Of a DNA stretch of 64,000 nt, positions 19,579 to 38,343 are shown one piece after another. The position numbers were made by a program, and so were the translations under genes. The notes below the pieces were generated by a model that ran no database searches, was not told where the DNA came from, and worked only from the letters and a program-made list of their open reading frames with translations. This DNA comes from Styela clava (Eukaryota), in contig NC_135258.1 of the NCBI RefSeq assembly GCF_964204865.1, forward strand, positions 10,230,001 to 10,294,000, in the 5' to 3' direction. Position 1 is the stretch's first letter, and every line of letters begins with the position of its first letter.

Positions 19579-21315
19579 ATGAGTCGTTCAATAGTTTTAA
19601 GATTTATATCTTGGTATCAAAATTGTTTGATAATACCTTTGGTTCTGACGGCTATAATATTTGGCGCGTTTCTTCATCAATGGCTTGAAGAGGATATTGA
19701 TAGTCCTCTTGAGCTCACAGATGATATCCATTGGAATTATTCAGACAATTTATTTGTGGTCAAGAATGAAATAAAACTTGAACCAATGTCTGCACATGTC
19801 TTGAAGATATACGAGCACTTGTCAAACTTACAAAAATCAAGTGAGTGCCTTGCGTGTCAACCTGCAGGCGACAGAAGAACACTCTGTGATAAATATCCTG
19901 GAAGATATGGCTGTCCTTCCTACGTTATGATTTGGATTATAATTTCTAATAGACAGGGATATACAACGTTTACCTCGTCTGTTCTTCGAAAATATAACAA
20001 CATAGCGGAAAGTGATATTCATTTGTTGACCGACAGATCAGACGAGATTGACTTCAAAACTTTACAAGGATTGTATGGCAGCGGCGCCAAATACTTTAAT
20101 CCAATCGGCGTAAAGCCAGGTGGAACGATGATACAATATTTGCTTAATAAGTTCCTCATGTCTGAGTACAAATTGTTACTATTGCTGGAGGATGATATGA
20201 TTCTCTTGAAAGATTGGTTAAGTTTCATTGAAGAACATATCACGCACACAGACGGAATACTTTCACTTTATCATCCATCCGTGAACCATAGTTTTGCTTA
20301 TGATTGCGAAAATCAAAAAGGCGAATTATGTGTTGGAGAATCAACACAAAATTCTGGCTTTGTTTTGACAAAATCAATCGCTGAATCTTGGCTTTCAAAA
20401 ATTAATGACTCAAAGTCCCATTATGGATGGAATGAATTACTTGAACAGGATTCAATTGAGCTTTTTTACCCAGTAAAATCTCTCACTATGCACATTGGAC
20501 AACAGCATCAAGATAAAGAAAATTGTGGAACAAATGAAGTAGCGCACAGATTTAATCGTTGCGAATATCCATCATGGATAAAAGAACAAATTGAGTTTTA
20601 TTTTGACAGATGCACAAGTCCGGATGAAATTTATCCAGATGATCCAGACTCTATAGAATTTAAAACAAGAATGAAAAAAAGATTCTGGGTTCGTCCTGCG
20701 ATTTCTTATTCATTTTATGGATACAAAACAAGATATATTGCAATTGCTTTAGGAAACGCTGCTCGTGTATCGAGGATTTATCCTGGCTGGAAGATTTGGC
20801 TATACCATGATGATTCAGTACCAGATCCCTATTTACAGACTTTTTGTGAATATGATGCCAGATTTATTGATATGACCGGAACAAAGTTAATAAATCAAAT
20901 GTCTTGGCGCTTTTTGGTAGCTTCGGAGCCAGTTAAAAGGTGGGCGATTCGGGATATCGATTCTCACTTGTTACGAAGAGGAAAAGCAGCTGTAGATGAA
21001 TGGATTGTTTCAGGTAAAAAGTTCCATATTATTAAAGATCATCCCAATCATTCTAAGCATGCAATAAACGGCGGAAGTTGGGGAGGAAATTCCGAAGCTA
21101 TGCCTCATATGAGAGAAGAACTTGAAAAATATGTCATCACCAATGCTTACATGGAAGACATGAATTTTCTAAAAGATATCGTTTGGCCTGTTGCTGAAAA
21201 ATCAGCCTGGATAAACGATGCATACTCTATTCACATGTTTGGTGAAGACCATCCTTTCCCTACCAAATTAGAAGTTGACTGGTCTTTTGTATGTAATGTA
21301 ATTTTATATCCGTGA
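19579..21315 (+). CDS. Intronless type II membrane protein with a GT-A-like glycosyltransferase domain plus a C-terminal uncharacterised GT-like domain (578 aa from Met at 19579; the ORF extends upstream to 19504)
   Basis: Long uninterrupted ORF. N-terminal TM helix CLIIPLVLTAIIFGAFL; GT-A hallmarks ISNR..Y, IHLLTDRS, LLLEDD, P.KSLTMHIG. C-domain motifs ISYSFYG...YPGW...MSWRFL...RDIDS...AAVDEW..SGKKFHIIKDHPNH...INGGSWG. AATAAA near 21352. The Met at 19579 follows a pyrimidine tract and AG. Confidence 0.85.
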   Translation: MSRSIVLRFISWYQNCLIIPLVLTAIIFGAFLHQWLEEDIDSPLELTDDIHWNYSDNLFVVKNEIKLEPMSAHVLKIYEHLSNLQKSSECLACQPAGDRRTLCDKYPGRYGCPSYVMIWIIISNRQGYTTFTSSVLRKYNNIAESDIHLLTDRSDEIDFKTLQGLYGSGAKYFNPIGVKPGGTMIQYLLNKFLMSEYKLLLLLEDDMILLKDWLSFIEEHITHTDGILSLYHPSVNHSFAYDCENQKGELCVGESTQNSGFVLTKSIAESWLSKINDSKSHYGWNELLEQDSIELFYPVKSLTMHIGQQHQDKENCGTNEVAHRFNRCEYPSWIKEQIEFYFDRCTSPDEIYPDDPDSIEFKTRMKKRFWVRPAISYSFYGYKTRYIAIALGNAARVSRIYPGWKIWLYHDDSVPDPYLQTFCEYDARFIDMTGTKLINQMSWRFLVASEPVKRWAIRDIDSHLLRRGKAAVDEWIVSGKKFHIIKDHPNHSKHAINGGSWGGNSEAMPHMREELEKYVITNAYMEDMNFLKDIVWPVAEKSAWINDAYSIHMFGEDHPFPTKLEVDWSFVCNVILYP

Positions 21316-23065
21316 ATATGCACTATAATTTGACAATAGTAAAAAAAATATAATAAAGTAAACATTAAGTACGTTTACAATGCAACTTAAATAACTCCTC
21401 TCTATCCAAGAAGATAATACTACGTGTACAGCCTTGGATAGGACTTTTCAAGTCTTGGGTCACCAATTGAACCTGATATTTGAAAACTTCGAGGTCCAAA
21501 AATACTCTAATGTATTCCTAACATTTAACTTGGTTAAATGAACTTCCTATTTTATTAATTTGAATTTTATAAAAATTGTTCCCTTCCCTAATATTCGTGT
21601 AAATATCTTTCACTGTCAGTTGACGCCAGCTGTTTTTATTATTATCTAGTCTAGTTTCTGTGATTTTATCTTTTAATCGCTGATTTTTATATCCATTTTT
21701 ACTGTGTGTGTTTATAACAAGCGGTGGGCATAACAGTTGAGGGCTCAAATTTGTTTAGTTCAAACTGCACGAAGAACGAGGGGCGACTTTTTACAACTAA
21801 ATTTAAATATGGTTCTCTGAAAAAGTACGCTAAGACGATTCTATAAAGAAATAGATTTGTGGTAGTGTCCACCAAAACTTTAGCACATCGACTTATTTAG
21901 AAAATATAACCAGCCCTTAGGATGTTACGAAATAATATTCGGAAATTCGCACTAACACCAGCGTAAAAAAAAACTAGCACGGCACCCACCTCACGTGTGT
22001 CAACGGCACAAATTTGTGATCCCGGAAATTATTATAGGCATGCAAATTCTGTGCGAGACGAATGCAATACAGCAACTGCACCTCTACTGAATATTTTGCT
22101 GCATCTGTCATTTATAACTTCCAATATATACCGATAGAAATTTGTAGGAAAAGACACGACAAATGGAGCACTGTTCTCGATACGACGGTTTAATTGGTAA
22201 ATCATATGGCAGAACTCTATATCCTAGATCACCACTTAGGCCTTAGAAACTATCAACCACGATGTGTCCACCCAAATCCTGTTTAAAATTTCAACCTCAT
22301 CATTAACGAATAGAAAGTGACATTACATATCGTCACGCTAATAACCGAATCGCGTAAGTCATTTTTAGCAGTTTTGAGAAAAACTTTCTAATGATATTGT
22401 TATGCCATTGAGAGTCAATAATTTGCCATGGTTCAATTTTTTGATCATAGCCGGATTTAAGTTAATTTGTATGACGTAGTTGAGTGACGTCAAAATGGCG
22501 CACTGTGACTTAGGCAGAAATGTGTCTATGACTTGGGGACATACGCAATTTTGCAACTTCACTATATGCACCAGTCCTGAAAACTAAAAATTCCGAAAAC
22601 GAATGTAATTCTCAGTATCCACAATGTCTAATCCCCAAAATAGCTAATCAGTTTCAATTACATTATTTTTTATGTTTAAAAATATATATTTCGTCAATAA
22701 AACACGTTCTGCACACCCACCGAAATAAGACTGAGATTAAATACAAAGAATAAAACAGCGATGCACCCAATATAAAAGTTAACCAAGGTGAATTGGACTC
22801 GGACAATGAATATCACAAGTGCACTCCTTCCTATACCGAAGTATAAATTCAAATTAATACGCGCTAAGCTAGAATCCGAGATGCAAAAACTCGAAAATAC
22901 TTCGCCGAGGTTATTTTGTCTTTGTTACGTCACAATAGTGCTGCGTTACCTATGATAATTCATTATGACGAAAAGTTCGAAACGAGCGAGTTCGAAAACT
23001 GTGATAAATTATAGTCTGGTGACGCCCCAAAGGTGAGGGTGCAGATCCGATGCGCATTCATCATA

Positions 23066-23403
23066 CCGTGTTTCCCCGGAAATAAGACTGGGTCTTATTT
23101 CAATTTTCCTCCGAAAAATAACACTAGGGCTTATTTTCGGGGGAGGTCTTATATTTTCATTTATCAAAAACAACATTACAAAGTAGGGAATTATGATATT
23201 TCCAAATATACAAAATATGAAAACCGATATCCATTTACTTACAAATACATTAACACGTTTTTACTTCAAATAACTGCAAAACATAGATTATTCATCGTTT
23301 AAATCGTGTAGGAGAGATGCTTGCTATCGACTAGGTTAAAAAAAGTTCGCGGTAAGGACTAGGCCTTATTTTAAGGGGAGGGCTTATTTTCGGGGAAATA
23401 CGG
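23066..23403. mobile_element. Tc1/mariner-pogo (Tigger-like) MITE
   Basis: TIR CCGTGTTTCCCCGGAAATAAG / CTTATTTTCGGGGAAATACGG flanked by TA on both sides. Confidence 0.85.
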
Positions 23404-23515
23404 TATGTAAAATTCACCATTCTCATAGGATATTGACTTCAAGGCTTGAAGATTTTTCAAATTTACCGAAGGCAAAGGTAAGTCTGGTTGATGATATAGT
23501 GGAGAAAGCCGTAAA

Positions 23516-24318
23516 CAGTGGTTCTTAACTTTTGTGAGCCTGTCGAACCCCTACGCTCTTCTGCAAGCTTTCGTCGAACCTCATCGTAGAAAGCGGTTTC
23601 ATAAAGAGAAAGCTAATTTTATGCCAGGCTATAGAAAATGATTATTATGGTGTGACTTTATATCTCAATGCATGTGTAAAATGTAATTTTGTAGAAACGG
23701 AAGATAATATTATGCATCAAAAACCTTTGGTAGCTCAAATAGGCGTTTTAATGCATTGTATTGTAGAAATAGAGATATCATATATCGTCTCATCTCCATA
23801 TTGAAGTTGTCCAGAACAGATGTTCATGATTTTAAGCAACCATAGTACTTGAAATTCAAAAACGCCTTGATTTTATATTCATTCAGGTACATTTACTTTT
23901 CTACTTATCCGTAAAACTGAGTTACATAATTAGATATAATAATATGTCGTTCACGCAAATATTTAGCTTTAAACCTATAGTTTGTCATAAATCTATATCT
24001 ATAGGTATTTTGTGCTCAAAAGCAGAAAGCGCCATCATTGAGAAGTACACCAAGCGCATAACATATGTGGCCATGTACTTGAATCCACTGTAGAACAGTC
24101 TTTGACAGATCCCCTAAAAGGCATATTTACCATCTACGCACAGCAGCTACACACGTCTAAGCTATTTTATGAGTTGTTCAAACGTGTAAACTCGTATATC
24201 AGTGATAAACTACATATTGGTTTCATGATATAAAACTGTTTCGAATGACCTTCGTCGAACCCCTAGTGCAGCTCCACCGAACTCAGGGGTTCGATCGAAC
24301 CCGGGTTAAGAAACACTG
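23516..24318. mobile_element. Non-autonomous hAT transposon
   Basis: TIR CAGTGGTTCTTAAC / GTTAAGAAACACTG; subterminal TCGAACCC repeats; imperfect TSD (CCGTAAA / CCGTAAC). Confidence 0.78.
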
Positions 24319-24712
24319 CCGTAACAGATCAGTTTTTATATGAATCACCCTACGAACTGTAATTCGAAGGCCTCGACCTCATCGTGGTCAACGAAACCGA
24401 GTGCTGCTTTCGTATATACTTGATTCCAACAAAATTTGCCACCTGCTCAACATATTGTCAAGCTTGATATGGACGATTCAAAATAGCTACTAAACGTTCT
24501 TAGAAACAAGTTTGATATTTTATCTAGATTCAATCCGGAGCTAAGCTCAACACAGACAGACACCCTATACATGCAGTCTGAACACGGCTGTATGCTACAA
24601 CTTTCATTTTATGGTTTCGGTTTGTTGCAACTTTGAGACAATTTTTCGTATTGAAATTTTAAATTTTTCATTATATAGATTATAGAGGATTGTTCAAGTT
24701 TGCATGAACAAA

Positions 24713-27700
24713 TTACGAAACCAATGCACCGGATTCAATTGGCAGTGATATTCCAGTAATATGTGGGGAAGAACACAAGAATAATATTCCATCTGCTATT
24801 GTCTTCGGCTCCATAAATCCGAACGGTTGAAGTTTTTCGAAGTCTGCTTTGCTCTATATAGAGTAAACGTATTTGTGGAAAATAAATAAAGAGTAAAGTG
24901 GGCAATGCTACTATACGCCTATGAAAATATTTTATAGAAGTTTTTTGTATGTGAATAAATTCAATAGTAATGGCATAAGTAAAGCAAGTGGATACAAAAA
25001 GATTTCTAAACTTACTTTTTCCAAGATATCTTCTGGTACAGTCCGTATCTCTGTATTTGCTTCATTGTTTGTTACAACAGTTCCTGGGCTTCAAGAGGTA
25101 AAAAAATTATTATATAGTATAATATTAAAAAGAAAATCTAGAGCTGCAAGAATAGGCACTATGTTCAAGTCTGAAAGGCCAAAATTGAAATTTTCGTTAT
25201 AGTTAAAAAAACGTAAAAATAAAAGTAAAATTTTGCATTTATTTATCAAAATTAAAACATGAATTTTTGCACCAAGCGAGATGAAGCCAAATGTTTCAGA
25301 ATTTAGGATTTTGAAACTAAAGTTTTAAAGTGTTAACACAGAAAACATTTTGGGTGAAGTAACTTTGGTCTCTTACTCTAACCCTTACTTGACACTGTTA
25401 ACTCGAATACCAAAGGGGCTACATTCCGCCGCAAATCCTCTAGTAAAATGATCCAATGCGCATTTCAACATTCCATAATGTACTTTTCGTGTAGCGTTAA
25501 AATGACGCAACCCAAGAAGACTCGAAACATTGACAACGCAACCTGAAATATATTTTTATTTCTTTTAATTATTTTTTTATAGTTACTATACTAGATCTTC
25601 GGCTTATAAGTTTTGCTTTGAGACTTTTGAGTATCAAAGATTCTACCTCGTTGAAGTCGATTTTTTCATATCACTGGAGCAACTTACTATTTTCAAAAGA
25701 ACCGAAATCGTTTCGGTTCGCCATTGCTTTCACAATTTATTACACTATGATTAGCTGGTGTGCATAGGATTTGCCCCCAACAAGTGTAACTGCGATGACA
25801 ACACAGTCAAATCAAATGCTTTAACCGCCTCAGTACGAAAAGTGACAACTTTCAAATATACCACAGGACACGTGTAACTCGAGTGAATGATTTGATTCGA
25901 CATGAATTTCGATGGCGAGTCATGAGTTTTATAGTCAACTGGGCGATTTTAATTTGCAGTCAGTTGCCTAAATCCAACCCGAGCACTTCAGAAGAAGATA
26001 TACAGGAAAATGAGAAAGCTAGAAAAAAGTAACCACTCATTACTTCTCAAGTACATTTCTCACCTTTCGTTTTCTTTAAATGTGGCAACGCGAATTTACA
26101 AAGGAAGACTGGTGCTCGTAGATTCGTTCGATACAACAACTCAAAATCTTCAAGTTCCATCTAAATATATATCATGTTTGTTGTCGTAAAATTTATGTGA
26201 TTCATACGCTTATTAAACAAAATAGAATACTCTACTTACATCGGCAATGTAACCAAACAATCCACGGCCGGCATTGTTCACCAAGATATCGATGGAAGAA
26301 AATTTTTCGACGGTTTTACTAATTACGGTTCCCAGATTTTCAAATTCGGATAAATCTACAACGATTTCGAACACCTGTAAATTTACGAACTCATAATGTA
26401 CTGAGGTATATGCAGTCACTTCCAAGACGAATCGGATAAATAAATGGATATAGGAATTCTTAATTGTCCGCGATTGGATCGGAATTATTTCAGTTAGGTA
26501 TTTTAATGAAAAAAATATATCAAAGTGTGACAGTTACAATATCCCAGGGTCTTCATTAATTGAATGCTCATACTATGCAGTCTTCACAAATAAGCAGATT
26601 TTGCTCCCGCTATATTGAACAGGAGAGAAATGCTCAAACTTCCGAGTTTCGCGTAGCAAGAATTTACAGAATCAAACCGGACAGTCATAGTTCCCATGGA
26701 TAAAATAATACAGCGAAATTTTGGACGAAATATCAGATTCATACGAAATTTAGAAATGAATAAAAGTAATAGCCTTCCGGCAGAATCAATCTTCAACCAC
26801 TGAAAATTTTGAAGCAATTGGTCCAGTATTCGAAGAGAAAAACGATTTTTTTAATGATAACGATGATGAATAACAAGAACAACAACATAATATTGAAACG
26901 ATCGTTATGTCCACTAACGTGTCCAAAAACGAATTTTTTTGAATTACGTTCAGTGGTTATTTAATGTTCAATATTACCCCACTGAACTAAATAAAATAGT
27001 ATAAAAATAATACTTTAAATATATTTATAAAGTGAAAATATTTTCAAAATCAACAGACTTAAAAGGCTAGAAACCGTTTAGGATAGAATTCAATTATTCC
27101 CTTTTGAACAATTATCCCTAAATCACGGACTGTTTGGGATGTATAGATGCAATGAATAATGCGAGTTTGATCCGAACTAGTCCAATTATTCACGGCTGAG
27201 CTATAGAGTCTATCTTTATATGTCACTATAATAATCACCAACCTCTACCCCGGCATCTCGACATGCCTTTGCTGTATTTGCCAATCCTGCTTTTTCTTTG
27301 TCACAAATAGATAGGTTCGCCCCTTCTTTTGCAAATTCAATTGCGGTAGCTGCACCAATGCCGCTTGCTGCTCCTGTTGAGATAAACTAATTTATTTCAT
27401 GACAAATAGAGTAAATGCGCGGTTGCTTTTCGCAAGAGAACTTCTCAGAGCCTGTGAATTCTTAGTAAAGATAGTTAGTAACACTCAATTCCACGTAAAA
27501 AATGAATTCGTGCTAGCAGGTTCCAATGCTTCTTGCCGTCCATGATGGTTCATATATACGATTGCTCATTCCACCACCAAGTCCATTTCATCTGAATTCA
27601 ATACTCCTATCGTTGTTAATAGGAATCAAAGTTCGACATATTATTTAACTATCTTATCTGCTTTTCCCTCTGTAGTTCCCTACTCAGGTAATTCATCCCA

Positions 27701-27767
27701 AACCTGATGTTTTACACAATGCTTTCTTACCTGTAACGATCACAACCTTCCCAGTAAATCTACTCAT
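24713..27767 (-). CDS. Classical SDR oxidoreductase paralogue A; 7 exons: 27767-27731, 27373-27243, 26374-26240, 26160-26064, 25542-25389, 25088-25016, 24853-24713 (255 aa)
   Basis: MSRFTGKVVIVTGAASGIG...ICDK...NNAG...RTNLRAP...VNVSS...YGMLK...GIRVNSVNPG. GT-AG introns lie at positions homologous to the other SDRs. Confidence 0.92.
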
Positions 27768-28344
27768 AGTTTTTTGACGTGTTATACAGCCCAGTGGTTT
27801 CTGACTATAGACTTGTCATTAGGCATGTTTGCCGTGTCGCTGAATTGTTTGCTCTCAACAATGCTCAATGGCTGCACGCTTAAACAATGCTGACGTATGA
27901 TAAATTGAATCCCTTGGGGTTATAAGTATAACTCACGTATATACACGAATTAGAGTAATGGACCGTTTTGTAAAATTGTTGTAGTTGTATATCATGAGGG
28001 TAGCACTGAGTGAGTGTACAAGTGTCGCTCATTGAATAAATAGGAAAAATTACAAAGGGAAAACTAGTAAACAATGCATAATGCATGCCATAGCTATATA
28101 ACAGCCTGAAACTTAGATACTGACCCAGTGGCCAAAATTTATTTAAGTCTAATTTTATCGACAAGAAAATATGGCACTACTAAATATGATAAATGAATGT
28201 TCTTAAGCTTGATCCTGGCTAGTATTTCCAAAAAAATATAATTTTTCCAATCATTTTTATTTTGCATCTTCTATATTACAACATACACACACTGCTTTTA
28301 ACATTTATAGGACAATGCAATAACAGTATTTCCTCATATGCACA

Positions 28345-31300
28345 TCAAAGTTTGCTCAAAACTCCTGCATCTATTGGTAGACATATCCCAGTTATATGGC
28401 GCGACGAACATAAATATAATATTCCATCAGCTATCACAATTGGCTGCATATAACCAGGCATGGCCCGTTCTTTCATAAATTTTCTTATCTGTTAATAAAC
28501 ATTATATGCTTTACTTTAAAAACGACAGTGTTATCAGGAAATTGAAAACATGATCTATTGTGGATATTCATGCGAAATGATTAATATACCATGCACTTTT
28601 TGGCGTTCCAGAAATATGTGTACCAATATGGAGGTAACTAATTTTGTTCACCTAGTTTACATCAAGGAAGGGACTGAAGCCTATGAGAAGGGGGTATATT
28701 CACTTGGCTAACAAAAACAATCCACAAACTTGTAATAAAACTAAAATGAGTAAAATCGGAATAAAACTATGGCCTAACCATAACCTGGTACACATACTAC
28801 GGGAGTACCCACTTTTTTTATCAAGTTTCATATTTGATAAATTCTGAGTGGTCCCAACTTTAAACATACTACTCAGGCTTGTGAAATCTTAAGGAATTTA
28901 ACGAATGGTAAAATGGACATAGTTATTGGTATATATGTTTATACCTTTACGCCTTCATCTTTAGTTATTGGCTGTTCTGGCCGAATTCTCGTCATCACTG
29001 GACCTGGACTAATATAAACCAATAGAAATTTAATTTTTTATGATTCAGGTATCAATCAATATACAAACTTTCAATATAAATATGAGTTACCAATCTATTT
29101 TTTGCTGTTGCAACACAAATGATGGGAATTACATAAAAAATATAAAACATGGTTTCATACAAATCATCAAACCGATAAAAAGCATTACATATTTTAAAAA
29201 ATCATCTTGGGAGTTGTTTCGTCATTGGCAATGGTATCTATGATTCGCAGTTGCAAAAAGCCTACCATTTACAATAACCGCCATTTAAATTAAAATACTA
29301 ATATTCTGATACAAGTATCCACTCGTCAATATAAATTTTCATTTGTTTTAAAAATCTTGTTTATTTTCACAACAAATTATAGGCAAAGAACAAAAACATG
29401 TAACTTACTTGATACTATTTACGCGTATACCACACTCGAGACATTCTGCAGACATAAAAAATAAACCAAGATTCATAAATTCAATACGACAACTGGGTTT
29501 AGAATAAATAGGAAAAATACACAATGACAGCATTGTTCATGCAATAAATTGTAAACGACGAACCTGCAGCAAATCCCCTTGTAAAATAATCCAATGCACT
29601 TTTTAGCATACCATACGGAACAGATTTCAAGATGGGCATTGTGCGTAAACCGAGTATGCTTGACACGTTAACCACACATCCTAAAATCAGCATTTAAATA
29701 TAAATAACGTACAAACGAGAAATAAGATTATATACCATCATAAATACCTTTACTCTGCTTCAAATACGGGAAAGCATATTTGCAAAGAAAAACGGCAGCA
29801 AGAAGATTTGTTCTAAACAACTTTTCATAATGTTTAACCTCCAGCTGTAAAAAGATTCTGGTTTACTAGATACTAATCCGTTTTGCTTTTTTATCCCGTT
29901 CATATCCCTTCTACAACTTTTCTTCTCTATTTCAATGTAAATATGCGGTTATCTTATTCACAATTTTAAATTAATAAAGTATTATCTTTTAAGTTGTGTC
30001 ATTGAGTTAGCACTTACGTCCACAATAGACGAATAGGATCCAATACCGGCGTTGTTGATTAGGATGTCAATACCTTTGAAGTGTCCAACAGTTGTATTCA
30101 CGATGTGTTGCAAATGGTCAAAATCGGACACATCTCCGATTATTTCTACGACCTGTATGTCACATATAAACTCAGTTCAAATATATATCACAAAAGTAGT
30201 AATACAGCGATTTTAACGCCAAGTCGCCAACATACAACGCCATTTGTAAGGCTATTTTGACGACTCAGATATAGATGGTTTTAGATAGCTATATATATAT
30301 ATATATATATACCGACCTCTGACCCATTATCTTTACATATTTTAGCCGTTTCGTTCAACCTTGCCTTGTTTCTTCCACAGATCGCTAATTTGGCACCTTC
30401 TTTTGAAAATGCTACCGCGGTGGCTGCACCTATTCCACTGGAAGCTCCTAAAACATTTTAAGTTTAGTTTATCAAAACTCTATCTTGCTTCAAGCATTAA
30501 CTGTTCTTCATGCTGAATGTTTGAATATGCTTCGGCAGTATTATATATTTATCAAATGACACGATACAAATGGTATACAGCGGGAGTCGCAACCTACGGC
30601 TCGCGACGCTTCACTGAAATCATAGGCTCATTAAACGAGTAATTGTGACTTATATAATTCTTAGGTTATAATACAATTTTGTTTACACGTTTTTCGCAAT
30701 AAATTCTATTACATAAAGAATATAATCGTCAAAACAGCTGATTTGTTTCTGTATTTAATTATAATTAGACAAATGGCAACGAAACGCAGAAAAGTTGATG
30801 CTAAGTGAAAAGGGTTTAATAGCGCGGAAAATATTCAAATGGAACTTTTTGAGATGCAATGGGGAAATAAATCTATATTTTATTCACGAGATGTATCACT
30901 GCTTGACTTTTATTATAAAAAGTATCTTCTCCATAGAAAACTCTATCCAAATTTGACAAACCATGCGAAAAAAATTCATATGGATGCTTTGAAGTACATA
31001 TGCATGGTGCGGTCTTCGCGCGCTGCTTAAAATTAAACTTCTGATCTTTGTGAAAAAAAATGAGATTCATTGGCCATCAGTTCAGTTTTCAACTTTCTAA
31101 AAAATATGTGCGACCCACCAATGACTTGCAACCCCTAATTTTGGCCCGCCGGCGACAAAAAGTTGCCGACCTCTTGTATACAGTTTTTTTTTCAAAACTT
31201 TCCCCTTCTATAAGGAATATTACGCTTTCTCTGACGTTTTTCGATTTAACGTTTTTAAAACTTGTAAATGTGGTGTTACAAGCATTCAAAAGGCGAAGCA

Positions 31301-31391
31301 GAAATCTCAAATTATATCAGTTAACCTACAGATCCTCCTGCACCATGAACATACCTGTAATAATTACAACTTTTCCTCCAAATTTTGCCAT
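28345..31391 (-). CDS. Classical SDR oxidoreductase paralogue B; 8 exons: 31391-31355, 30447-30317, 30152-30018, 29844-29748, 29680-29564, 29445-29409, 29008-28945, 28488-28345 (253 aa)
   Basis: MAKFGGKVVIITGASSGIG...ICGRN...NNAG...RTNLLAA...VNVSS...YGMLK...GIRVNSINPG. Exon sizes 37/131/135/97/117/37/64 match the tandem copies. Confidence 0.92.
30581..31175. mobile_element. Degenerate hAT MITE in intron 1 of SDR paralogue B
   Basis: TSD GTATACAG at 30573-30580 and 31176-31183; degenerate TIR; shares internal sequence (GCTCATTAAACGAGTAATTGTG) with the element at 50888-51368. Confidence 0.78.
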
Positions 31392-34006
31392 AGCTTCTTT
31401 CACATCAAATTATAGCATTATTTACTTACCGTCGTAGTCGCACACGTACTTAGTACCAGCTTATTCAGCTACACGACTGACTGACTCGTGATAAGAAAAT
31501 CGCGTATAGTTTAATGGGCGTAAGTGTTAAAGTACTGATGGGAATGAATCGCGGAAAAATATTGCAGGGGACGACGTAATTTCGAACGACACAACTCCTT
31601 ATCGAATAGAACAACAAAACAGATCGTGTCAAATACTATGAAATAGATATGTTATTTGTGAATTTTATAGCAGTAAATCCGACGTCTTTTACAAACGTAG
31701 TCAATTATTTACAAAATTACTATAGGTTCAACTGATGGTAGTTTGTGCACACTGAATAAATCACAAACGCCTATGTCATTTGCGTCCATAATGAACAGAT
31801 CAAAGTAGCGGAATAGGCTGCGGGATATTTAAACACTCAAATTAAAATGCAAATCTGCAAAATATTTGCGAGAAATCAATAATGTTTTTACTTTGGAAAC
31901 CTTATTGATGAAACGTCTCTAAGCCTGAGAAGTGAAAAAGTTGCTGCTGAATTATTTGCTACCATACACTACTGTTTTTCAATGTTATTCTGCTGTGAAA
32001 TTTGAATATTCCAATGAAAGAACATCAAAAATAATCAAAATTACTATATAAAGCGAACATTTGATAGCAATCGTGAATAGTAACATGGGAAAGGTAATAG
32101 AGCAACATTATATATTCCTTCACACTCTTAATGAAATTCTTGTCAATGTATCAACCCTTCCTCACGAGTTATCACTGTCCCGGGCAAATGAGTATTAACG
32201 AACGCGTTTGGAACGTGTGCTTTCCGCCGACAAATCAAATCGGCGCTGACCAAAGGCGTTGTGGGATTACGAGGGAATCAACAGAGCGTAGAAGGTTGTA
32301 TTGTTGGGCGGCACGCACTTCCAAATGATGTACGCTTCTGTATTAGTCCAACTGAAGAGACTTACGCTATGAGTATTTCTTAGAGAGTTTGATATCTAAA
32401 AGAAAGAAATGCTAGAATAAAACAATGTATGGAGTGAAAACTATTGCGGTTGTTTGATTTAAAGTCATGCGACACAACAGTAAATTATTTATATCTTTGG
32501 TGTGTTTTGCATCTATTTAGCAACGTTAATTGTTAAAAATGTCGTTTTTGGATAGAAGACTAGCACTAACAAATTCTGAACGATCAATTCGACTAAGACA
32601 AACGTTTTTTCGCCGTCTTCAGTATACGGTCAATCCTAACAGTAACAATCAATTCTGGAGGAATAATTTATGATTAGTATGTCATAAGGGGCATTGTCAA
32701 GGTCAACATTTAACAATTAGCCTTGTATAGATGAACGTACGAAATTGTGGTTTGTCCGTTTCAATTTCCATTCGTTGGTTATAGTCTTTTGCATTTGGAT
32801 CGTATTAAAAGTCTTGAGAAACATGAAATCTTTGTGTTCACATATCGAACACTTCAAATATCACATATAGTATATATATATATACTGTAGTTAGTTGTAT
32901 CTGCTGTGCTGTAAATGTCTGTTACATAAATATTACATTTATTGATTTATAAGATATATTCTGAAAGTAGTGACTTATTTATTGCCGGTGAAGTCCGCTG
33001 ATATTTATAATATTCGAACTGTCAGTATAGATAGAGGATTAGTAGGTAGGCGCGATCCGAGTATACATCGATAGTTTAACAATAGAGCAATGATCAAATA
33101 TTTAGACACGACGACAAGGTCGATTGACGATCGCAATTTGAATAAGATATAAAAGTAATCCCTTTTTAGCGACTTATGCCATCTCCAAGTTTAGAATATT
33201 TAAAATCGATTAGCCTTCAGCCGAGAAAATCAAGTTTTAAAAACCCTGAGAACAACAACTATTCGGCAAAACGTTTCATAAATCCTCTTCGTGGTCAACA
33301 ATAGGTCGAAGGTATTTGTGTATAGTACACCAACGACTTCGCACACTTGAATGAACTCGCTACGGGCGAATTTTGGAATGCGGTTACAATCCACTCCTTA
33401 TAGCAGAATCACTAATAATGGACCACGATTACGCATCTTTTGTGATATATAGGGATATTAATTTGCTTATTCAGTTGATTAATTACTCGGTCGTAAATGC
33501 AACTGATTAACAGAAACAAAGTTTAAATTGAAGTGGCATACGTGGTAAATAAAGGCGATTCTTGCGTAATTCGTGGTGCGAAGCAGAGGCGGTTTTAGGT
33601 TTCACTTAGTGAATCAACCATTTCACATTATGCGAATTAATACAAACAACTCTGAACGACAACAATGAGACGCTGTGGAAAAAAATCGGTCAATTCAATG
33701 GCCTCGACGATCATAATACCGCGCGAGCCGTTGGAAACAAATTCGTCATCGCACAGATGAATTATTGTTAAATAATCGCCTGCGAGCAAAGTGCCATATT
33801 GGTCTTCTTATCTGGGTGATTCAAGCAACGACCTCGGTTTTCTCCATAGTCCAAGCCTGTGTATTTGTATGAATAAGGGAAATTTCATTTTAAGTATATT
33901 TGAACCCATACTAACCCTAACCCATGGGTTTTAACACCCGCATATAGATTGAACCCGCGGATATACACATGGGTTCAAATGTAGGGTCACCTTGTTTCTC
34001 AGTATC

Positions 34007-34324
34007 ATTTTTGTTTGTTTATATTTTAAACTTTTTAGCGTCCGGAAACTTTCCAAGTTCCTAATAAGGGCAGTCATTTGATAATTATTTGATATCAGAT
34101 ATGAGCTGTCCCGAGAATAAGAGTGTGTTTTTATATGTTCTGCGTTAATCTCGCCTGATATATGGATTTTTGTTTGTTTATATTTTAAACTTTTTAGCGT
34201 CCGGAAACTTTCCAAGTTCCTAATAAGGGCAGTCATTTGATAATTATTTGATATCAGATATGAGCTGTCCCGAGAATAAGAGTGTGTTTTTATATGTTCT
34301 GCGTTAATCTCGCCTGATATATGG
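34007..34324. repeat. Apparently perfect 159-bp tandem duplication upstream of the second GT-like gene
   Basis: ATTTTTGTTTGTTTATATTTTAAAC...CTCGCCTGATATATGG starts at 34007 and at 34166. Confidence 0.92.
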
Positions 34325-34640
34325 ATAAATGGTTTAAATGCTATAAATGGTTTTCTAAATCTTTTCCGCTATCACGCTAGTTTACTTCAATAGTTTTTAT
34401 CCAAGTAAAATCCCACTGAATTGTTATATTCCTATTTTTCGTTACTGATGTTATTGTTATTATTTCGCGTAACGATGATTGGGGGCAAAGGAACTTGGGA
34501 TCTTCTGTAAAAAGCCCCCTCAATAAAAATGAAAAAATAAAAAAAACATAACGCCCTAGTTCGGCGATCGCCACGTTAGTTGTTACCAACAGTCAACACG
34601 GTACACTTATGTAATTCCATGTATTTTCTTTTACGAAAGC

Positions 34641-36401
34641 ATGAATAGAAAAGCACATTTATGCTTATGTATGATTCAAAAATATTCAATCTTCCTCATG
34701 TTATTGACGGCCGCAATTTTCGGCGCATTTTGCCGCCAGTGGATTGAAGAAGAATATCATAAGGACATTTACACATTTATTATACTCACGAAAGTACGGA
34801 TGGGGGAGACTGCAGAAAAAATGAACCACATTTGGAGTGACTCTTATAAAGTGACCGAAGATAGAAAATTTGAATCCATTTCCTCGCATGTTTTTGATAT
34901 ATCTAACCACCTTACAGAGTTGAGAAAATCAAGAGAATGTATTGCGTGTCAGACGATAGACAACACACTATGTGATAAATACCCAGGAAGATATGGCTGC
35001 CCTTCTTACATCATGACTGGTATATTACTTTCCAATCGAGTGGGATATACTAAATTTACGTCGTCTGTTATTCGAAAATATAACAACTTAGCAGATATCG
35101 ATATCCATTTGTTCGGCGACAGTTCTGACAAATTTGACCTAAAAACATTACGTGCATGGTACGGCGGTGGAGTAAAGTACCATGGTACAAACGCCGCTAG
35201 GTCAAGAAGTGAGAAGATTCAGTTCTTGCTTGAAATTTTCACCAAATCGAAGTATAAATTACTGATGTTACTGCATGATGATATAGTTCTGTTAAAAGAT
35301 TGGATGGGTTTCATTGAGAAATATATAACACATACAGACGGTTTACTTTCACTTTATCATCCATCTGTGAACCATAGTTTTGCTTATGATTGTAAAAAGC
35401 TCCGAGGCGATTTGTGTGTTGGGGATTTAATAGAAGATTCTGGATTCGTTCTGACAAAATCAATTGCCAAGTTATGGCTTTCTAAAATAAGCAGTTCAAC
35501 TTCCGCACATGCATTAAAAGAACTTCTTCGTACAAATTCAATTCGAATATTATATCCAGTCAAGTCTCTTATGATGTACATCGGTCAGAAAGACCAAGAT
35601 AAAGAAAATTGCGGGATGAATGAAGTAGCTCATAGATTCAATCGTTGCGAATATCCATCATGGATAAAAGAACAAATTGAGTTTTATTTTGACAGATGCA
35701 CGAGTCGGGATGAGATTTATCCAGATGATCCAGACTCTGAGGAATTTGAAACAAAAATGAGAAAGCGATCTTGGGTTCGACCAGCAATTTCCTATTCCTT
35801 TTATGGATACAAAACAAGATATGTGGCAATTGCTTTGGGTAATGCTGCTCGAGTGTCGAGTACATATCCTGGGTGGAAAATGTGGGTTTATCACGATAAA
35901 TCAGTTCCCATTCCTTATCTAGAAACATTCTGCCAACACGATGTTAAACTTGTACAAATGTCAAAATCTACCTTTGTGAATGAAATGACTTGGCGTTTTC
36001 TTATAGCTTCCGAACCAGTCAAAAGATGGATAATTCGAGATATTGACTCACATTTACTTCACAGAGGAAAGGCGGCTGTAGATGAATGGATTGCCTCTGG
36101 CAAAAAATTTCATATTGTCAAAGAAGATGTAGAGCACACAAAACATCCAATAAACGGAGGAAGCTTTGGTGGAACTCATGATGCAATTCCTACAATGAGA
36201 GACGAACTACAAAAATTTGACTTATCAAATGCTTACATGGAAGATATGCGATTTCTAAGATTAATTGTGTGGCCTATTGCTAAAAAGTCTTACTGGATAA
36301 ACGAAGAATTTCCGACCCACGCATATGGAGAAGGTCATCCTTTTCCCACGAAACGGGTAGCACCCTGGGCTTTCGTATGTAACGTAATATTGTGGCCATA
36401 G
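34641..36401 (+). CDS. Intronless type II membrane two-domain glycosyltransferase-like protein, paralogue of 19579-21315 (586 aa)
   Basis: Uninterrupted ORF; TM helix IFLMLLTAAIFGAFC. Collinear with the first copy (TLCDKYPGRYGCPSY, LSLYHPSVNHSFAYDC, RPAISYSFYGYKTRY, WRFL, RDIDS, AAVDEW). Confidence 0.88.
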   Translation: MNRKAHLCLCMIQKYSIFLMLLTAAIFGAFCRQWIEEEYHKDIYTFIILTKVRMGETAEKMNHIWSDSYKVTEDRKFESISSHVFDISNHLTELRKSRECIACQTIDNTLCDKYPGRYGCPSYIMTGILLSNRVGYTKFTSSVIRKYNNLADIDIHLFGDSSDKFDLKTLRAWYGGGVKYHGTNAARSRSEKIQFLLEIFTKSKYKLLMLLHDDIVLLKDWMGFIEKYITHTDGLLSLYHPSVNHSFAYDCKKLRGDLCVGDLIEDSGFVLTKSIAKLWLSKISSSTSAHALKELLRTNSIRILYPVKSLMMYIGQKDQDKENCGMNEVAHRFNRCEYPSWIKEQIEFYFDRCTSRDEIYPDDPDSEEFETKMRKRSWVRPAISYSFYGYKTRYVAIALGNAARVSSTYPGWKMWVYHDKSVPIPYLETFCQHDVKLVQMSKSTFVNEMTWRFLIASEPVKRWIIRDIDSHLLHRGKAAVDEWIASGKKFHIVKEDVEHTKHPINGGSFGGTHDAIPTMRDELQKFDLSNAYMEDMRFLRLIVWPIAKKSYWINEEFPTHAYGEGHPFPTKRVAPWAFVCNVILWP

Positions 36402-38343
36402 AGTTGACTTTCGCCAAATCAACCACCAGTTTTGGCTCGTATATTCCGTCCAGCTGTTTTCAAACCGACATTTCTCAAGAGTATAAATACGTTTGAAATC
36501 ATGGTTGCCAAATCACAACCATTTGTAGTGAAATATTTTCATGCTCCATAGCAAGGCTTTCGGTAAACTATTAAAATAAGGGTTAAATACGAATATATTC
36601 ACCTGTAACAGTCTGAAGTATTATTTTTGCATAAAAGTGGTAAATTTCTCAGGAATGAAATGTTTTTATACTTCGGTCAAATGTTTTTGTATTATTCACT
36701 TTTTTACCTAAAGTTTCCATAATATTGCATTGTATATTTTTTTATACCATGAAATAAGGAACTGTGAGTCGTTTTCATTGTTTTGTCACTTTATTTTATC
36801 TTTTTGGGAAAGGTGACACAGGGAAAACTTGAATGGAATGGTGCTAAACTTGAGTATTCACCACTCCGTCTGATATCGATGTGCCTAATCTGTAAATTTA
36901 CTGAGGCAAAACAATACTTCAAGCTACCAGTTTGACTTTTGCGTTTATCGTACTTAGTCATTATAATACTTCAATTAGATGAAACTAATCACCGTTTTCT
37001 AAGAAGTAAATATTTTCGAACCAATCTACCCATCAAGAGTCACAACACACAAGCCAGTGTTAGTTGGAAAACAGAGAAATTCTATCATTAGGGGTAAGAG
37101 ATTCAAAGTCGCAAAATAGGATTTTCTAGAATCGGGGAAATCACTGTTGTTTTTGTATGTCCTTCAAAGAGGCTAAGCCGCTAAATGTTAAAATAGTCGT
37201 TTAAAGTTTTTGGCTCTTTTTCGGGGAATATTTAAATGACTTTTTTATTTACAACGGAAAAAATATTTTTGTATTGAAATGATGTATTTGCGATATCAAT
37301 AGCATATATATGTTGAAAATGATGACGTGTTGATGACGTCATCACGGAGTTTTGTGATGGTCTTCGCCGGACCAGTGAAAAAGACAGAACGGAGAGCAAA
37401 TCAACCCTTGAATACTGAAGTATGTGGTATTGTGTCACGTATGGGATAAAGAGTCCAATAAATTATATTGTGATCTAATAAAAACGCCATCATTGTTTCA
37501 GGTATTAAAACTGGGCAAATTTGAGATTCTGAGTACACGTATGCCCAGTATGTTCCCCAGCTTTTAATTTTTTGGGGGGTATTTCGAAATTTAGGGGGTG
37601 GTAAATAATTTGCTATTAGCGATTAAACTATTTGTATTCTCAAAAATTGGTATGTATTTCAAAAACGATGTACATGAGGGGTCCCCCAAGTTAATTGACG
37701 GCGAGCCAAAATACACAGCAGAATAAAAATGTAGGGCCAGAAAAGGGGACCGAGAAAAAGTGCGCGACGACACGGCTGGGGTTTAGGGCGCGCTTAAGCG
37801 CCCTGAGAAAATTTTGAGAAATAAGCACCAAAGTAGGCTCTAAGCTTGATTTTAGATACACCTAGCATTGCAGTTTGTTATGTAATGAAATTAATAATTA
37901 TAATATTAGCTGATAGAATTCCCGAGGAATAAATATCAAGCACGGCTTTCATCAAGTAATTTACAACTTATAGTGACTAATGAAGTTACTTGCTCCTCTA
38001 GCTGCTAGCATATGGCATCGTATGAATGGCTACTTTGTTACACATTCCACATTTTTTTGAACATGTTTGTTTGACTTTTGTACGAATCAAGCAATAAATT
38101 AAATTTTGAAATACGCGCGTCAACTGATCATAATGGCGCATAATGTTGTATTCCTTCAGAACTGAAATATTTTGTTGGCAAGGAAGACAAATCGCTGAAG
38201 TTTTATTTTTTCCAATAAAGAAATAAAAACCTTGCCATTCATTTAAAAAATGTCTGTTTTCAGTGCCTAGTTTTCGTTTTGTGACATCTTTAAGCTTTCT
38301 TAATATATGGCTAAAACGGTTTCTAAAATACTGCGGTGTGTAA

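What the first reader, a model, noticed from the sequence alone, without database searches (positions are those of the whole stretch)
19579..36401. Two intronless tandem-glycosyltransferase-like genes: candidate horizontally acquired, Golgi-anchored glycan synthases
Seen: two ~1.75 kb uninterrupted ORFs (19579-21315, 34641-36401) in a region where the SDR, boule and MUTYH genes have 3-8 introns. Each has a short cytosolic tail, one TM helix, a Cys-rich stem, a GT-A-like domain (NR..Y / D.S / EDD or HDD / P..SL..HIG) and a second domain (ISYSFYG, YPGW, WRFL, RDIDS, AAVDEW..S.K.FH, GG.WG). From memory, not from a search: the second motif set matches an uncharacterised GT-like family common in bacteria and large DNA viruses and patchy in invertebrates, with no vertebrate member that I recognise. 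Inference: an HGT-derived bifunctional glycosyltransferase domesticated into the secretory pathway, possibly building an extracellular polysaccharide. Tunicate cellulose synthase is an established precedent for HGT of a glycan synthase.
Basis: partly seen in the sequence, partly recalled or inferred. Interest (0 to 1): 0.85.

Follow-up and report, generated by a model that had tools for sequence, protein, structure and literature searches.

The report
Sea-squirt family of double glycosyltransferase genes
The two long intron-free genes are real, and at least one is probably transcribed; they belong to a family of at least 16 sea-squirt genes for membrane-anchored enzymes with two different sugar-transferring domains, whose closest relatives are in marine protists and giant-virus-like DNA rather than in other animals, so they are likely an old foreign acquisition of unknown glycan function.

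Summary

They are not an isolated pair. The genome holds at least 16 intact single-ORF paralogs on four scaffolds, plus decayed copies. Both domains are under purifying selection. Contigs from RNA-like runs of three studies cover ORF2 collinearly.

The C-domain family is large: bacteria, phages, giant viruses, protists and the clam Mercenaria. On trees the tunicate clade sits inside a eukaryote-type clade. A grouping with the bacteria/phage clade is rejected (AU p=0.004). The N domain has only environmental relatives, on gene-dense marine contigs with eukaryote-like genes.

Transfer is plausible, but the source looks protist or giant-virus-like and old, not bacterial. Vertical descent with losses is not excluded (AU p=0.39). 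Polymerase function is untested, and the N-domain DXD varies among paralogs.

First-reader notes s1-809844 and s1-825867 flag similar clusters elsewhere in this genome.

The parts
19579..21315 (+). ORF1: complete uninterrupted coding sequence, 578 aa from the ATG at 19579 (an upstream in-frame ATG at 19504 would give 603 aa)
19624..19674 (+). ORF1 hydrophobic membrane anchor (CLIIPLVLTAIIFGAFL), preceded by basic residues
   Evidence: read from the translation; the paralog's model has a long N-terminal helix
19843..19914 (+). ORF1 Cys-rich stem module (ECLACQ...C...GC)
   Evidence: the same module occurs 1-3 times in paralogs and in environmental N-domain relatives
19921..20613 (+). ORF1 N-terminal GT-A domain; EDD at 20188-20196 occupies the DXD position
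   Evidence: fold inferred from the ORF2 model
20668..21312 (+). ORF1 C-terminal GT-A domain with all family motifs intact (RDIDS 20950-20964, KFHIIKDHPNH 21019-21051, GGSWGG 21070-21087)
   Evidence: domain-only model pLDDT 94.4, pTM 0.90; fold search; motifs
34641..36401 (+). ORF2: complete uninterrupted coding sequence, 586 aa
   Evidence: model pLDDT 86, pTM 0.78
34683..34733 (+). ORF2 hydrophobic membrane anchor (YSIFLMLLTAAIFGAFC)
34935..35000 (+). ORF2 Cys-rich stem module
35007..35699 (+). ORF2 N-terminal GT-A domain; HDD at 35274-35282 directly follows strand 207-212, the canonical DXD place
35754..36398 (+). ORF2 C-terminal GT-A domain; DID at 36039-36047 directly follows strand 462-466; the family motif FHxxRDHPxH has diverged to KFHIVKEDVEH (36105-36137) and GGxWGG to GGSFGG (36156-36173)
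34637..36768 (+). Stretch covered collinearly, without joints, by contigs of three RNA-like runs from three studies; taken as the ORF2 transcript body
36570..36575 (+). ATTAAA, a possible variant poly(A) signal about 55 nt before the end of one run's contig (36630); no AATAAA on this strand between the stop codon and 37457
   Evidence: suggestive only

Best explanation
The two ORFs are functional members of a tunicate gene family with at least 16 intact copies in this genome. Each copy has a single coding exon.

The proteins are type-II membrane proteins of the secretory pathway, most likely Golgi. They carry a short basic N-terminus, one anchor helix, a disordered and Cys-rich stem, and two unrelated GT-A glycosyltransferase domains facing the lumen.

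The C domain belongs to a large, unnamed GT-A family. Its DXD (RD[IV]DS) is invariant in all 16 copies, so I take it as the constant catalytic module that transfers a sugar from a nucleotide sugar with a divalent metal. The N domain is a divergent GT2/GT13-like GT-A. In the scaffold-C10 subfamily, which includes both window genes, it keeps an xDD motif like the EDD of GnT-I. In these copies it probably adds a second, different sugar. The protein would then install two consecutive residues, or a repeating disaccharide, on a lumenal acceptor, as LARGE1, PmHS2 and K4CP do.

Origin: both modules come from a eukaryote-type pool (marine protists or their giant viruses). The fusion gene was most likely acquired or assembled once in an ascidian ancestor, long ago, and then expanded by tandem and dispersed duplication.

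Shown here: the ORFs, paralogy, folds, motif positions, purifying selection, probable transcription of ORF2, family size, and phylogenetic position away from bacteria and phages. Inferred: Golgi location, catalytic activity, bifunctionality, and horizontal origin.
For: Family and gene structure: there are 16 full-length single-ORF matches of 43-64% identity on scaffolds C10, C13, C17 and C18, plus frameshifted or fragmented copies. All but one (C13_b, whose first Met lies inside the domain) start with a hydrophobic N-terminus.

Selection: dN/dS is 0.08-0.24 for the C domain and 0.16-0.34 for the N domain in most pairs. RD[IV]DS is present in 16 of 16 copies.

Lumenal location: four invariant cysteines and a Cys-rich stem are shared with environmental relatives.

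Transcription: three small RNA-like runs from three studies cover only 34637-36768, with no joints, and have zero depth in the unique flanks. A DNA-like run covers all 30 bins.

Residency: the scaffold is 23.5 Mb. GC3 is 0.31-0.32 against 0.30 in neighbouring host ORFs.

Origin: the N+C fusion was found only in P0001-P0004, and P0001 is 68% identical to a C17 copy. The tunicate clade has support 99/96. It lies inside a clade with support 100/99 that contains Mercenaria, Thalassiosira, EukProt/MMETSP protists and environmental rows. Bacteria plus IMG/VR form a separate clade with support 100/98 (the same picture). Forcing tunicates together with the bacteria/phage clade costs 82.5 lnL, p-AU 0.004. 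N-domain relatives lie on contigs that are 88-98% coding, next to protein kinase, SNF2+RING, SET and Nma111-like genes. The N domain was not found in IMG/VR.
Against: No enzymatic, localisation or tissue data exist.

The RNA status of the runs is a guess by the tool, and contigs show neither strand nor transcript ends. ORF1 expression was not tested.

The N-domain DXD position is not conserved across the family. It reads NVE, DSE, SGE or NSE outside the C10 clade. Good structural matches include the non-catalytic accessory domain of LH3. Many copies, and possibly all, may therefore be monofunctional.

ORF2 itself has substitutions at nearly invariant C-domain positions (RDHP to KEDV, W to F).

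C-domain fold matches tie across inverting and retaining families, so the mechanism cannot be assigned.

Horizontal origin is not proven. Tunicate and Mercenaria sequences cluster together (support 79-84), and their monophyly is not rejected (p-AU 0.39). The source organisms of P0001-P0004 and of most neighbouring rows are unknown. Listing limits and length filters could hide other animal members.
Confidence: 0.55

Rival explanations
1. Vertical descent, not transfer. The C domain, or the whole gene, is an old eukaryotic gene that was present in the bilaterian ancestor. It was kept in tunicates and some bivalves and lost almost everywhere else. The introns were lost, or never gained, in the tunicate line.
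For: The C domain occurs in several eukaryotic supergroups: Naegleria, an aphelid, stramenopiles and a haptophyte. Tunicate and Mercenaria rows fall in one cluster (support 79, 80, 84/84). Holding them as one clade is not rejected (p-AU 0.39). Codon composition is fully host-like, and the paralogs are deeply diverged.
Against: Among named proteins only one animal species outside the tunicate-type clade appeared. The N domain has no named animal relative at all. All 16 copies lack coding introns in an intron-rich neighbourhood. The animal cluster also contains environmental and MMETSP rows and is poorly supported. This reading needs many independent losses.
Confidence: 0.25
2. Monofunctional enzyme with a pseudo-glycosyltransferase partner domain. 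Only the C domain transfers sugar. The N domain has become a non-catalytic scaffold, an acceptor-binding module or a dimerisation module, like the accessory domain of LH3 or one domain of each EXT or CHSY subunit. Different paralogs may pair up so that each contributes one active site.
Against: The two window genes and their subfamily keep xDD (EDD, HDD, NDD, DDD) at the canonical position. Glu can replace Asp as a metal ligand. The N domain is still under purifying selection in most pairs, and its other invariant residues and cysteines are kept.
Confidence: 0.3
3. Direct, recent transfer from a bacterium or a phage, as the reader's 'bacteria and large DNA viruses' remark could suggest.
For: The C domain is abundant in bacteria and phages. 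The genes have no coding introns.
Against: Bacterial and IMG/VR rows form their own clade (100/98), away from the tunicate clade. Forcing them together is rejected (p-AU 0.004). Identity to bacterial copies is 28-37%, against 44-49% to eukaryote-type ones. None of the 115 fetched bacterial loci, 109 of which encode the C domain, encodes the N domain. Composition is host-like, and the family is old and dispersed.
Confidence: 0.03
4. Processed retrocopies of an intron-containing tunicate parent gene.
For: The coding sequences are intron-free, there are many dispersed copies, and some copies are decayed.
Against: A six-frame search of the whole assembly found no exon-by-exon match. Every full-length hit is one open frame. 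Copies lie in tandem clusters rather than at random sites. No poly(A) tract was seen after ORF2.
Confidence: 0.05
5. Contaminant DNA or a chance or decaying ORF without function.
For: None beyond the lack of annotation in protein-family libraries.
Against: The genes lie inside a 23.5-Mb scaffold between host genes. Contigs from a DNA-like run cross the ORF borders. There are 16 intact copies with dN/dS well below 1. The folds are confident. RNA-like coverage comes from three studies.
Confidence: 0.01

Closest known systems
LARGE1/LARGE2, PmHS2, K4CP (tandem GT-A bifunctional glycan polymerases)
   Different: There is no sequence relationship. The relative domain orientation differs (rmsd about 19-20 over both domains). 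Polymerising activity is unknown here. The domain families are not GT8+GT49 or GT45+GT2.
GnT-I (MGAT1) and POMGnT1, CAZy GT13
   Different: The GNT-I Pfam model gives no hit. Identity in structural alignments is 12-15%. Relatives of the N domain score on GT2 (PF00535) instead.
LH3/PLOD3 and mimivirus R699 (collagen glucosyltransferase with a GT-like accessory domain)
   Same: They are the top Foldseek hits over both domains. They set a precedent for a catalytic GT-A domain joined to a non-catalytic GT-like domain, and for a giant-virus homologue of an animal enzyme (PMC9546862, PMC12279948).
   Different: There is no sequence similarity and no lysyl hydroxylase domain. The domain order and the roles of the two domains are unknown here.
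PBCV-1 A64R domain 1 (chlorovirus capsid-glycan glycosyltransferase, PDB 2p6w)
   Different: The signal is marginal and covers less than half of the domain. Many other GT-A structures match better.
Tunicate CesA and GH6 (established horizontally acquired glycan genes of tunicates)
   Same: They are glycan-related genes of tunicates with a non-animal phylogenetic affinity (PMC7464555, PMC10334666).
   Different: According to those papers, CesA and GH6 point to bacteria. The family here points to eukaryote-type or giant-virus-like relatives, is multi-copy, and its transfer is not demonstrated.

Membership tests
GT-A fold glycosyltransferase superfamily | Single Rossmann-like alpha/beta/alpha domain that matches solved GT-A enzymes over most of its length | tested here: met
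GT-A fold glycosyltransferase superfamily | Acidic DXD-type metal and nucleotide-sugar motif directly after the central strand | tested here: met
   ORF2 has HDD at 212-214 after strand 207-212, and DID at 467-469 after strand 462-466. ORF1 has EDD and DID. The C-domain motif is invariant in 16 of 16 copies. The N-domain motif is kept as xDD only in the C10 subfamily.
CAZy GT13 / Pfam GNT-I (PF03071) | Sequence match to the family model | tested here: not met
   No Pfam family at E up to 1 for ORF1, and only a chance Lipocalin_5 hit for ORF2.
CAZy GT2 / Pfam Glycos_transf_2 (PF00535) | Sequence match to the family model above the gathering score | tested here: inconclusive
   The window proteins give no hit. 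The homologous region of relatives does: P0033 scores 44.6 bits, P0037 scores 35.2 bits, and a bacterial 281-aa relative scores 41.2 bits, against a cut-off of 23.3. Membership is therefore transitive only, as a divergent GT2-like domain.
CAZy GT8 / Pfam Glyco_transf_8 (PF01501), for the C domain | Sequence match to the family model | tested here: not met
   None of 32 C-domain homologues hits any GT Pfam family at E up to 0.1. The structural similarity to glycogenin ties with GT2, GT45 and GT78 enzymes. The nearest Atlas clusters with a Pfam family are GT8 and Nucleotid_trans, at only 127-128 shared features.
Bifunctional tandem-GT glycan polymerases (LARGE, PmHS2, K4CP, EXT/CHSY) | Two glycosyltransferase domains of different families in one chain | tested here: met
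   There are two GT-A domains with no detectable mutual similarity (hhalign probability 0.1%).
Bifunctional tandem-GT glycan polymerases (LARGE, PmHS2, K4CP, EXT/CHSY) | Both active sites competent, with alternating transfer that builds a repeating polymer | not testable with these tools
   Motifs are compatible in ORF1, altered in the C domain of ORF2, and altered in the N domain of most other paralogs. An enzyme assay is needed.
Type-II Golgi membrane protein | Short basic N-terminus, one hydrophobic anchor, a stem, and a lumenal catalytic part with disulfides | tested here: met
   The sequence shows MNRKAH followed by YSIFLMLLTAAIFGAFC. There is a low-confidence stem at residues 49-107, 11 lumenal cysteines, and four invariant cysteines shared with relatives. 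No dedicated topology predictor was available, and the location itself is inferred.
Horizontally acquired gene | Recipient clade nested with support inside a donor group, and absent from the recipient's sister lineages | tested here: inconclusive
   The tunicate clade is nested in a eukaryote-type clade (100/99) and separated from bacteria and phages. However, the nearest rows are unnamed, Mercenaria sits beside it, animal monophyly is not rejected, and absence from other animals rests on limited listings.
Horizontally acquired gene | Integrated in the host chromosome, not a contaminant | tested here: met
   The genes lie on a 23.5-Mb scaffold with host genes on both sides. Copies occur on four scaffolds and GC3 is host-like.

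The most novel reading that the evidence does not exclude
The family is a tunicate-specific glycan co-polymerase system assembled from two GT-A modules of protist or giant-virus origin. Paralogs with complementary intact sites (N-active C10 copies, C-active C17/C18/C13 copies) work as hetero-oligomers, as EXT1/EXT2 do. Together they build a lineage-specific secreted polymer of the tunic, for example the sulfated L-galactans of styelid ascidians, whose synthases are, to my knowledge, unknown.
Probability: 0.1. Interest if true: 0.8.

Novelty: new variant of a known kind. Interest (0 to 1): 0.55.

Why it matters
Neither domain is covered by Pfam, NCBIfam or PHROGs. Domain-based surveys of tunicate glycosyltransferases, including the one in the Styela genome paper (PMC7540406), would therefore probably miss a family of 16 genes.

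The C domain defines a very large uncharacterised GT-A family spanning phages, bacteria, giant viruses, protists and a few animals (3,231 representatives at E up to 0.001 for the whole-protein query, most of the listed ones matching the C domain). A tractable animal member would give that family a first function.

If the foreign origin holds, this would be a further glycan gene, after CesA and GH6, that tunicates took from outside animals. This time the source would be the eukaryote or giant-virus pool. It could bear on how the tunic's unusual polysaccharides are made.

Tried and rejected
The source organisms and gene contexts of P0001-P0004, of the Mercenaria genes and of the environmental hits could therefore not be read. 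This is the main gap.
I replaced the genome scan with a degenerate DNA pattern.
- Family libraries gave no usable family for the window proteins or for Mercenaria P0005: Pfam found only a chance Lipocalin_5 hit (E 0.15) for ORF2 (window proteins only); NCBIfam and PHROGs found nothing.
- PDB sequence searches found nothing for ORF2 or for the N-domain profile. The C-domain profile gave only a marginal A64R hit.
- The N domain was not found in IMG/VR. No C-domain gene lies within the 374 kb of N-domain metagenome loci.
- The two domains are not detectably related to each other, so there was no internal duplication.
- The mixture-model (PMSF) careful tree did not finish in 712 s. I report its quick version, plus a careful LG+G4 tree on 62 rows from which I removed long-branch and redundant rows. 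The clade tests used groups that I named after seeing the trees.
- Fold search could not tell inverting from retaining for the C domain.
- Three literature searches found no description of this family.
- I did not run complex prediction, because I claim no specific interaction.
- A search for AATAAA across the whole window was uninformative.
- The species name Styela clava comes from earlier notes of this scan. I did not verify it.


Full report

Yes. The + strand carries an ORF at 19504/19579-21315 (603 or 578 aa) and another at 34641-36401 (586 aa). The next longest ORFs in the 64-kb window are 325 and 312 aa. Only 22% of the window lies in ORFs of 100 aa or more, and GC is about 35%. Chance is therefore excluded.

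The two proteins are 62% identical end to end.

The neighbourhood does contain split host genes. A 70-aa ORF at 26213-26425 (-) covers only positions 48-95 of the SDR model adh_short. 54240-55217 (-) carries the NUDIX_4 domain of MutY/MUTYH. I did not look for boule.

According to earlier notes of this scan the genome is the sea squirt Styela clava; I did not verify that. The window is G000:C10:10230001-10294000, on a 23.5-Mb scaffold.

**2. Anatomy of the proteins**

Neither Pfam, NCBIfam nor PHROGs gives a usable family (Pfam's only hit is a chance Lipocalin_5 match, E 0.15, for ORF2), and no PDB sequence matches.

An AlphaFold2 model of ORF2, built on a 74-sequence alignment, is confident (pLDDT 86, pTM 0.78). 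It shows a long N-terminal helix that contains the hydrophobic anchor, a low-confidence stem (residues 49-107), and two alpha/beta domains at about 120-360 and 380-586.

Foldseek's best hits are enzymes with two GT-A domains in tandem: mimivirus R699, LH3, PmHS2, LARGE1, K4CP and COLGALT1. GnT-I and POMGnT1 also score well.

Both DXD-type motifs sit where GT-A enzymes have them, directly after the central strand. In ORF2 these are HDD 212-214 and DID 467-469. In ORF1 they are EDD and DID.

The two domains show no similarity to each other (hhalign probability 0.1%).

The basic N-terminus, the single anchor, 11 lumenal cysteines and a Cys-rich stem fit a type-II lumenal protein. Golgi residence is an inference.

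**3. It is a gene family, not a pair**

A six-frame search of the assembly finds 16 full-length copies, each a single open frame of 455-622 aa and 43-64% identical to ORF2. They are distributed as follows:
- four on C10 (the two window genes and two more about 340-365 kb downstream of ORF2);
- seven on C17 (six fetched and read as ORFs);
- three on C18;
- three on C13;
- plus a frameshifted copy (C10:10621971-10623521) and fragments (C10:10608152-10608705 and C13:8688896-8691517).

No exon-by-exon match that would mark a spliced parent was seen.

dN/dS is 0.08-0.24 for the C domain and 0.16-0.34 for the N domain in most pairs. It rises to 0.62-0.76 for the N domain among the youngest C17 duplicates.

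The motif table across copies shows:
- RD[IV]DS of the C domain is present in all 16 copies.
- The second C-domain motif, FHxxRDHPxH, is intact except in ORF2 (KFHIVKEDVEH, with GGSFGG) and in C10_d, where it is decayed.
- The N-domain DXD position is xDD only in the C10 subfamily (HDD, EDD, NDD, DDD). Elsewhere it is KSD, DSE, NVE, SGE or NSE. Environmental relatives have DSD.

It keeps a pseudo-enzyme reading of the N domain alive.

**4. Expression**

One search for sequencing runs found 13 holders in four studies. Three runs from three studies have only 48-79 Mb of contigs, against a 377-Mb genome, and the tool guessed them to be RNA. I laid these, together with one large DNA-like run, on 32600-38500.

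The small runs cover only 34637-36768, collinear with the genome and without any joint. Their depth is zero in the unique flanks (32600-33781 and 36934-37524). The DNA-like run covers all 30 bins.

I read this as transcription of ORF2 as an mRNA with an unspliced coding region. There are caveats. The RNA label is a guess, and contigs give no strand, ends or level. The pyrimidine-rich ...ttttcttttacgaaag just before the ATG could be an acceptor for a 5'-UTR intron or for trans-splicing. An ATTAAA at 36570-36575 precedes one contig end.

**5. Relatives of the C domain**

An exhaustive HMMER search of 1.84 billion representatives gave 3,231 proteins at E up to 0.001. The two domains hit separately, in many architectures.

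A profile of 32 short homologues found 1,266 proteins at E up to 1e-8. The named ones come from Mercenaria mercenaria, Naegleria gruberi, Amoeboaphelidium, Chrysophaeum, Pavlovales and Thalassiosira, and from MMETSP and EukProt transcriptomes. Cluster look-ups raised Mercenaria to at least six paralogs on chromosome-scale contigs of 74-86 Mb.

The domain is also widespread outside eukaryotes:
- 427 IMG/VR loci;
- 109 of 115 bacterial loci recovered with a degenerate pattern for FH[IVM]MRDHP, including Azospirillum, Chitinophaga, Verrucomicrobia, Planctomycetes and cyanobacteria, at 28-37% identity;
- giant viruses in BFVD: a Mimivirus relative (E 2.6e-16, 26% identity, TM 0.82), Aureococcus anophagefferens virus and an iridovirus.

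None of 32 members hits a glycosyltransferase Pfam family. The only PDB sequence signal is PBCV-1 A64R domain 1, at E 0.025.

**6. Relatives of the N domain**

These are far fewer, and all are environmental. They share the anchor, the CC..C..C stem module and four invariant cysteines with the tunicate proteins.

They are fused to other glycan-tailoring domains: FkbM methyltransferase, GT29, GT10, GT31 and pyruvyl transferase. By eye there is also a LicD-like domain.

In relatives the N-domain region scores on GT2, PF00535.

The N domain was not found in IMG/VR. A metagenome scan gave 33 loci. The closer ones lie on contigs up to 75 kb long, with 88-98% of the DNA in long ORFs on both strands. 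Their neighbours are a protein kinase, an SNF2+RING helicase, a SET protein, an Nma111-like protease and many ORFans. That profile fits a giant virus or a very compact picoeukaryote, not a bacterium. The most distant hits (26-28% identity) are ordinary bacterial GT2 genes in operon-like arrays.

The N+C fusion itself occurs only in P0001-P0004, from unnamed Logan assemblies. P0001 is 68% identical to a C17 copy over its full length, and P0002 and P0003 are about 46% identical to Styela copies. Other organisms, presumably ascidians, therefore carry orthologues. P0001 groups with one Styela subfamily rather than outside the whole family, which suggests that the subfamilies predate that split.

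**7. Phylogeny of the C domain**

Three trees agree: a FastTree of 454 domains, a quick IQ-TREE with the C20 mixture on 96 rows, and a careful LG+G4 tree with ultrafast bootstraps on 62 rows.

The Styela copies plus P0001-P0004 form one clade (99/96). It sits in an unresolved cluster (84/84) with the Mercenaria clade (93/88), a few environmental rows and one MMETSP row. That cluster lies inside a clade (100/99) that also holds Thalassiosira and EukProt sequences. The bacterial and IMG/VR rows form a separate clade (100/98).

Forcing the tunicate clade together with the bacteria/phage clade costs 82.5 log-likelihood units (p-AU 0.004). Holding tunicates and Mercenaria as one clade is not rejected (p-AU 0.39). 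Both groups were named after I had seen the trees.

GC3 of the two ORFs (0.31-0.32) equals that of neighbouring host ORFs (0.30).

**8. Interpretation**

These are membrane-anchored proteins with two distinct GT-A domains. The C domain has every sign of a working metal-dependent transferase. In the window's subfamily the N domain also keeps a GnT-I-like xDD. The most economical mechanism is therefore sequential transfer of two sugars to a lumenal acceptor. A processive co-polymerase like LARGE1 or PmHS2 is a possibility, not a finding.

On origin, a direct bacterial or phage source is disfavoured. Several observations point to an old acquisition from a marine protist or giant virus into an ascidian ancestor, followed by expansion:
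- the coding regions are intron-free in all copies;
- the N domain is absent from named animals;
- the C domain is extremely patchy in animals;
- the tunicate clade nests among protist and environmental sequences.

I put this at roughly 0.5-0.55, and vertical descent with massive loss at about 0.25.

The Styela genome paper reported only cold-shock genes as transferred, and its glycosyltransferase survey was domain-based (PMC7540406). Three literature searches found no description of this family.

**9. Limits**

Noticed in passing
window 58716-59654 (-): A single-ORF, 312-aa cytosolic-type sulfotransferase (Sulfotransfer_1, E 9e-52; no membrane anchor), about 22 kb downstream of ORF2. It also appears to lack coding introns.
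   Followed up: partly
window 33782-34175 and 37525-38500: Very high-copy interspersed repeats flank ORF2. Summed depth reaches 1e5-2e6 in the DNA-like run, against about 400-600 for unique sequence, and the repeats are also present in the RNA-like runs. Many contigs end at 33983.
   Followed up: no
window 34167-34338: A contig of the DNA-like run X10 skips 170 bp just upstream of ORF2. This is probably an insertion/deletion polymorphism in the promoter-proximal region.
   Followed up: no
G000:C10:10621971-10623521 (L211); G000:C13:8688896-8691517 (L212); G000:C10:10608152-10608705: Decayed family members. One copy is split over three frames with stop codons. Two others are fragmentary remnants, and the C13 one is interrupted by about 1.7 kb of unrelated sequence.
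   Followed up: partly
paralogs L005, L006, L011 (stem regions) and environmental proteins P0051, P0056, P0079: The stem is built from 1-3 repeats of a module CC-x5-EC-x2-C-x9-11-FC-x6-G-x2-GC. The same module precedes the N domain in environmental relatives. I did not search it against any family library on its own.
   Followed up: no
L218 and L222 (marine metagenome contigs of 75 and 44 kb): Two contigs share the gene order SET-domain protein, then an N-domain glycosyltransferase (526 aa or a 2176-aa giant), then an SNF2+RING helicase, in DNA that is about 90% coding with many ORFans. This is probably an uncharacterised giant-virus or picoeukaryote lineage rich in multi-domain glycan enzymes up to 2,726 aa long (L231).
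   Followed up: partly
proteins P0005, P0170, P0177, P0040, P0036, P0298: The hard clam Mercenaria mercenaria has at least six paralogs of the C domain on chromosome-scale contigs. They are joined to a different, unidentified N-terminal region. No other named animal appeared in the lists I could see.
   Followed up: partly
P0079 and P0143 (residues about 340-526): In these environmental proteins the N domain is followed by a segment that looks LicD/fukutin-like by eye (GGTLL...D.D motifs). This was not tested against Pfam.
   Followed up: no
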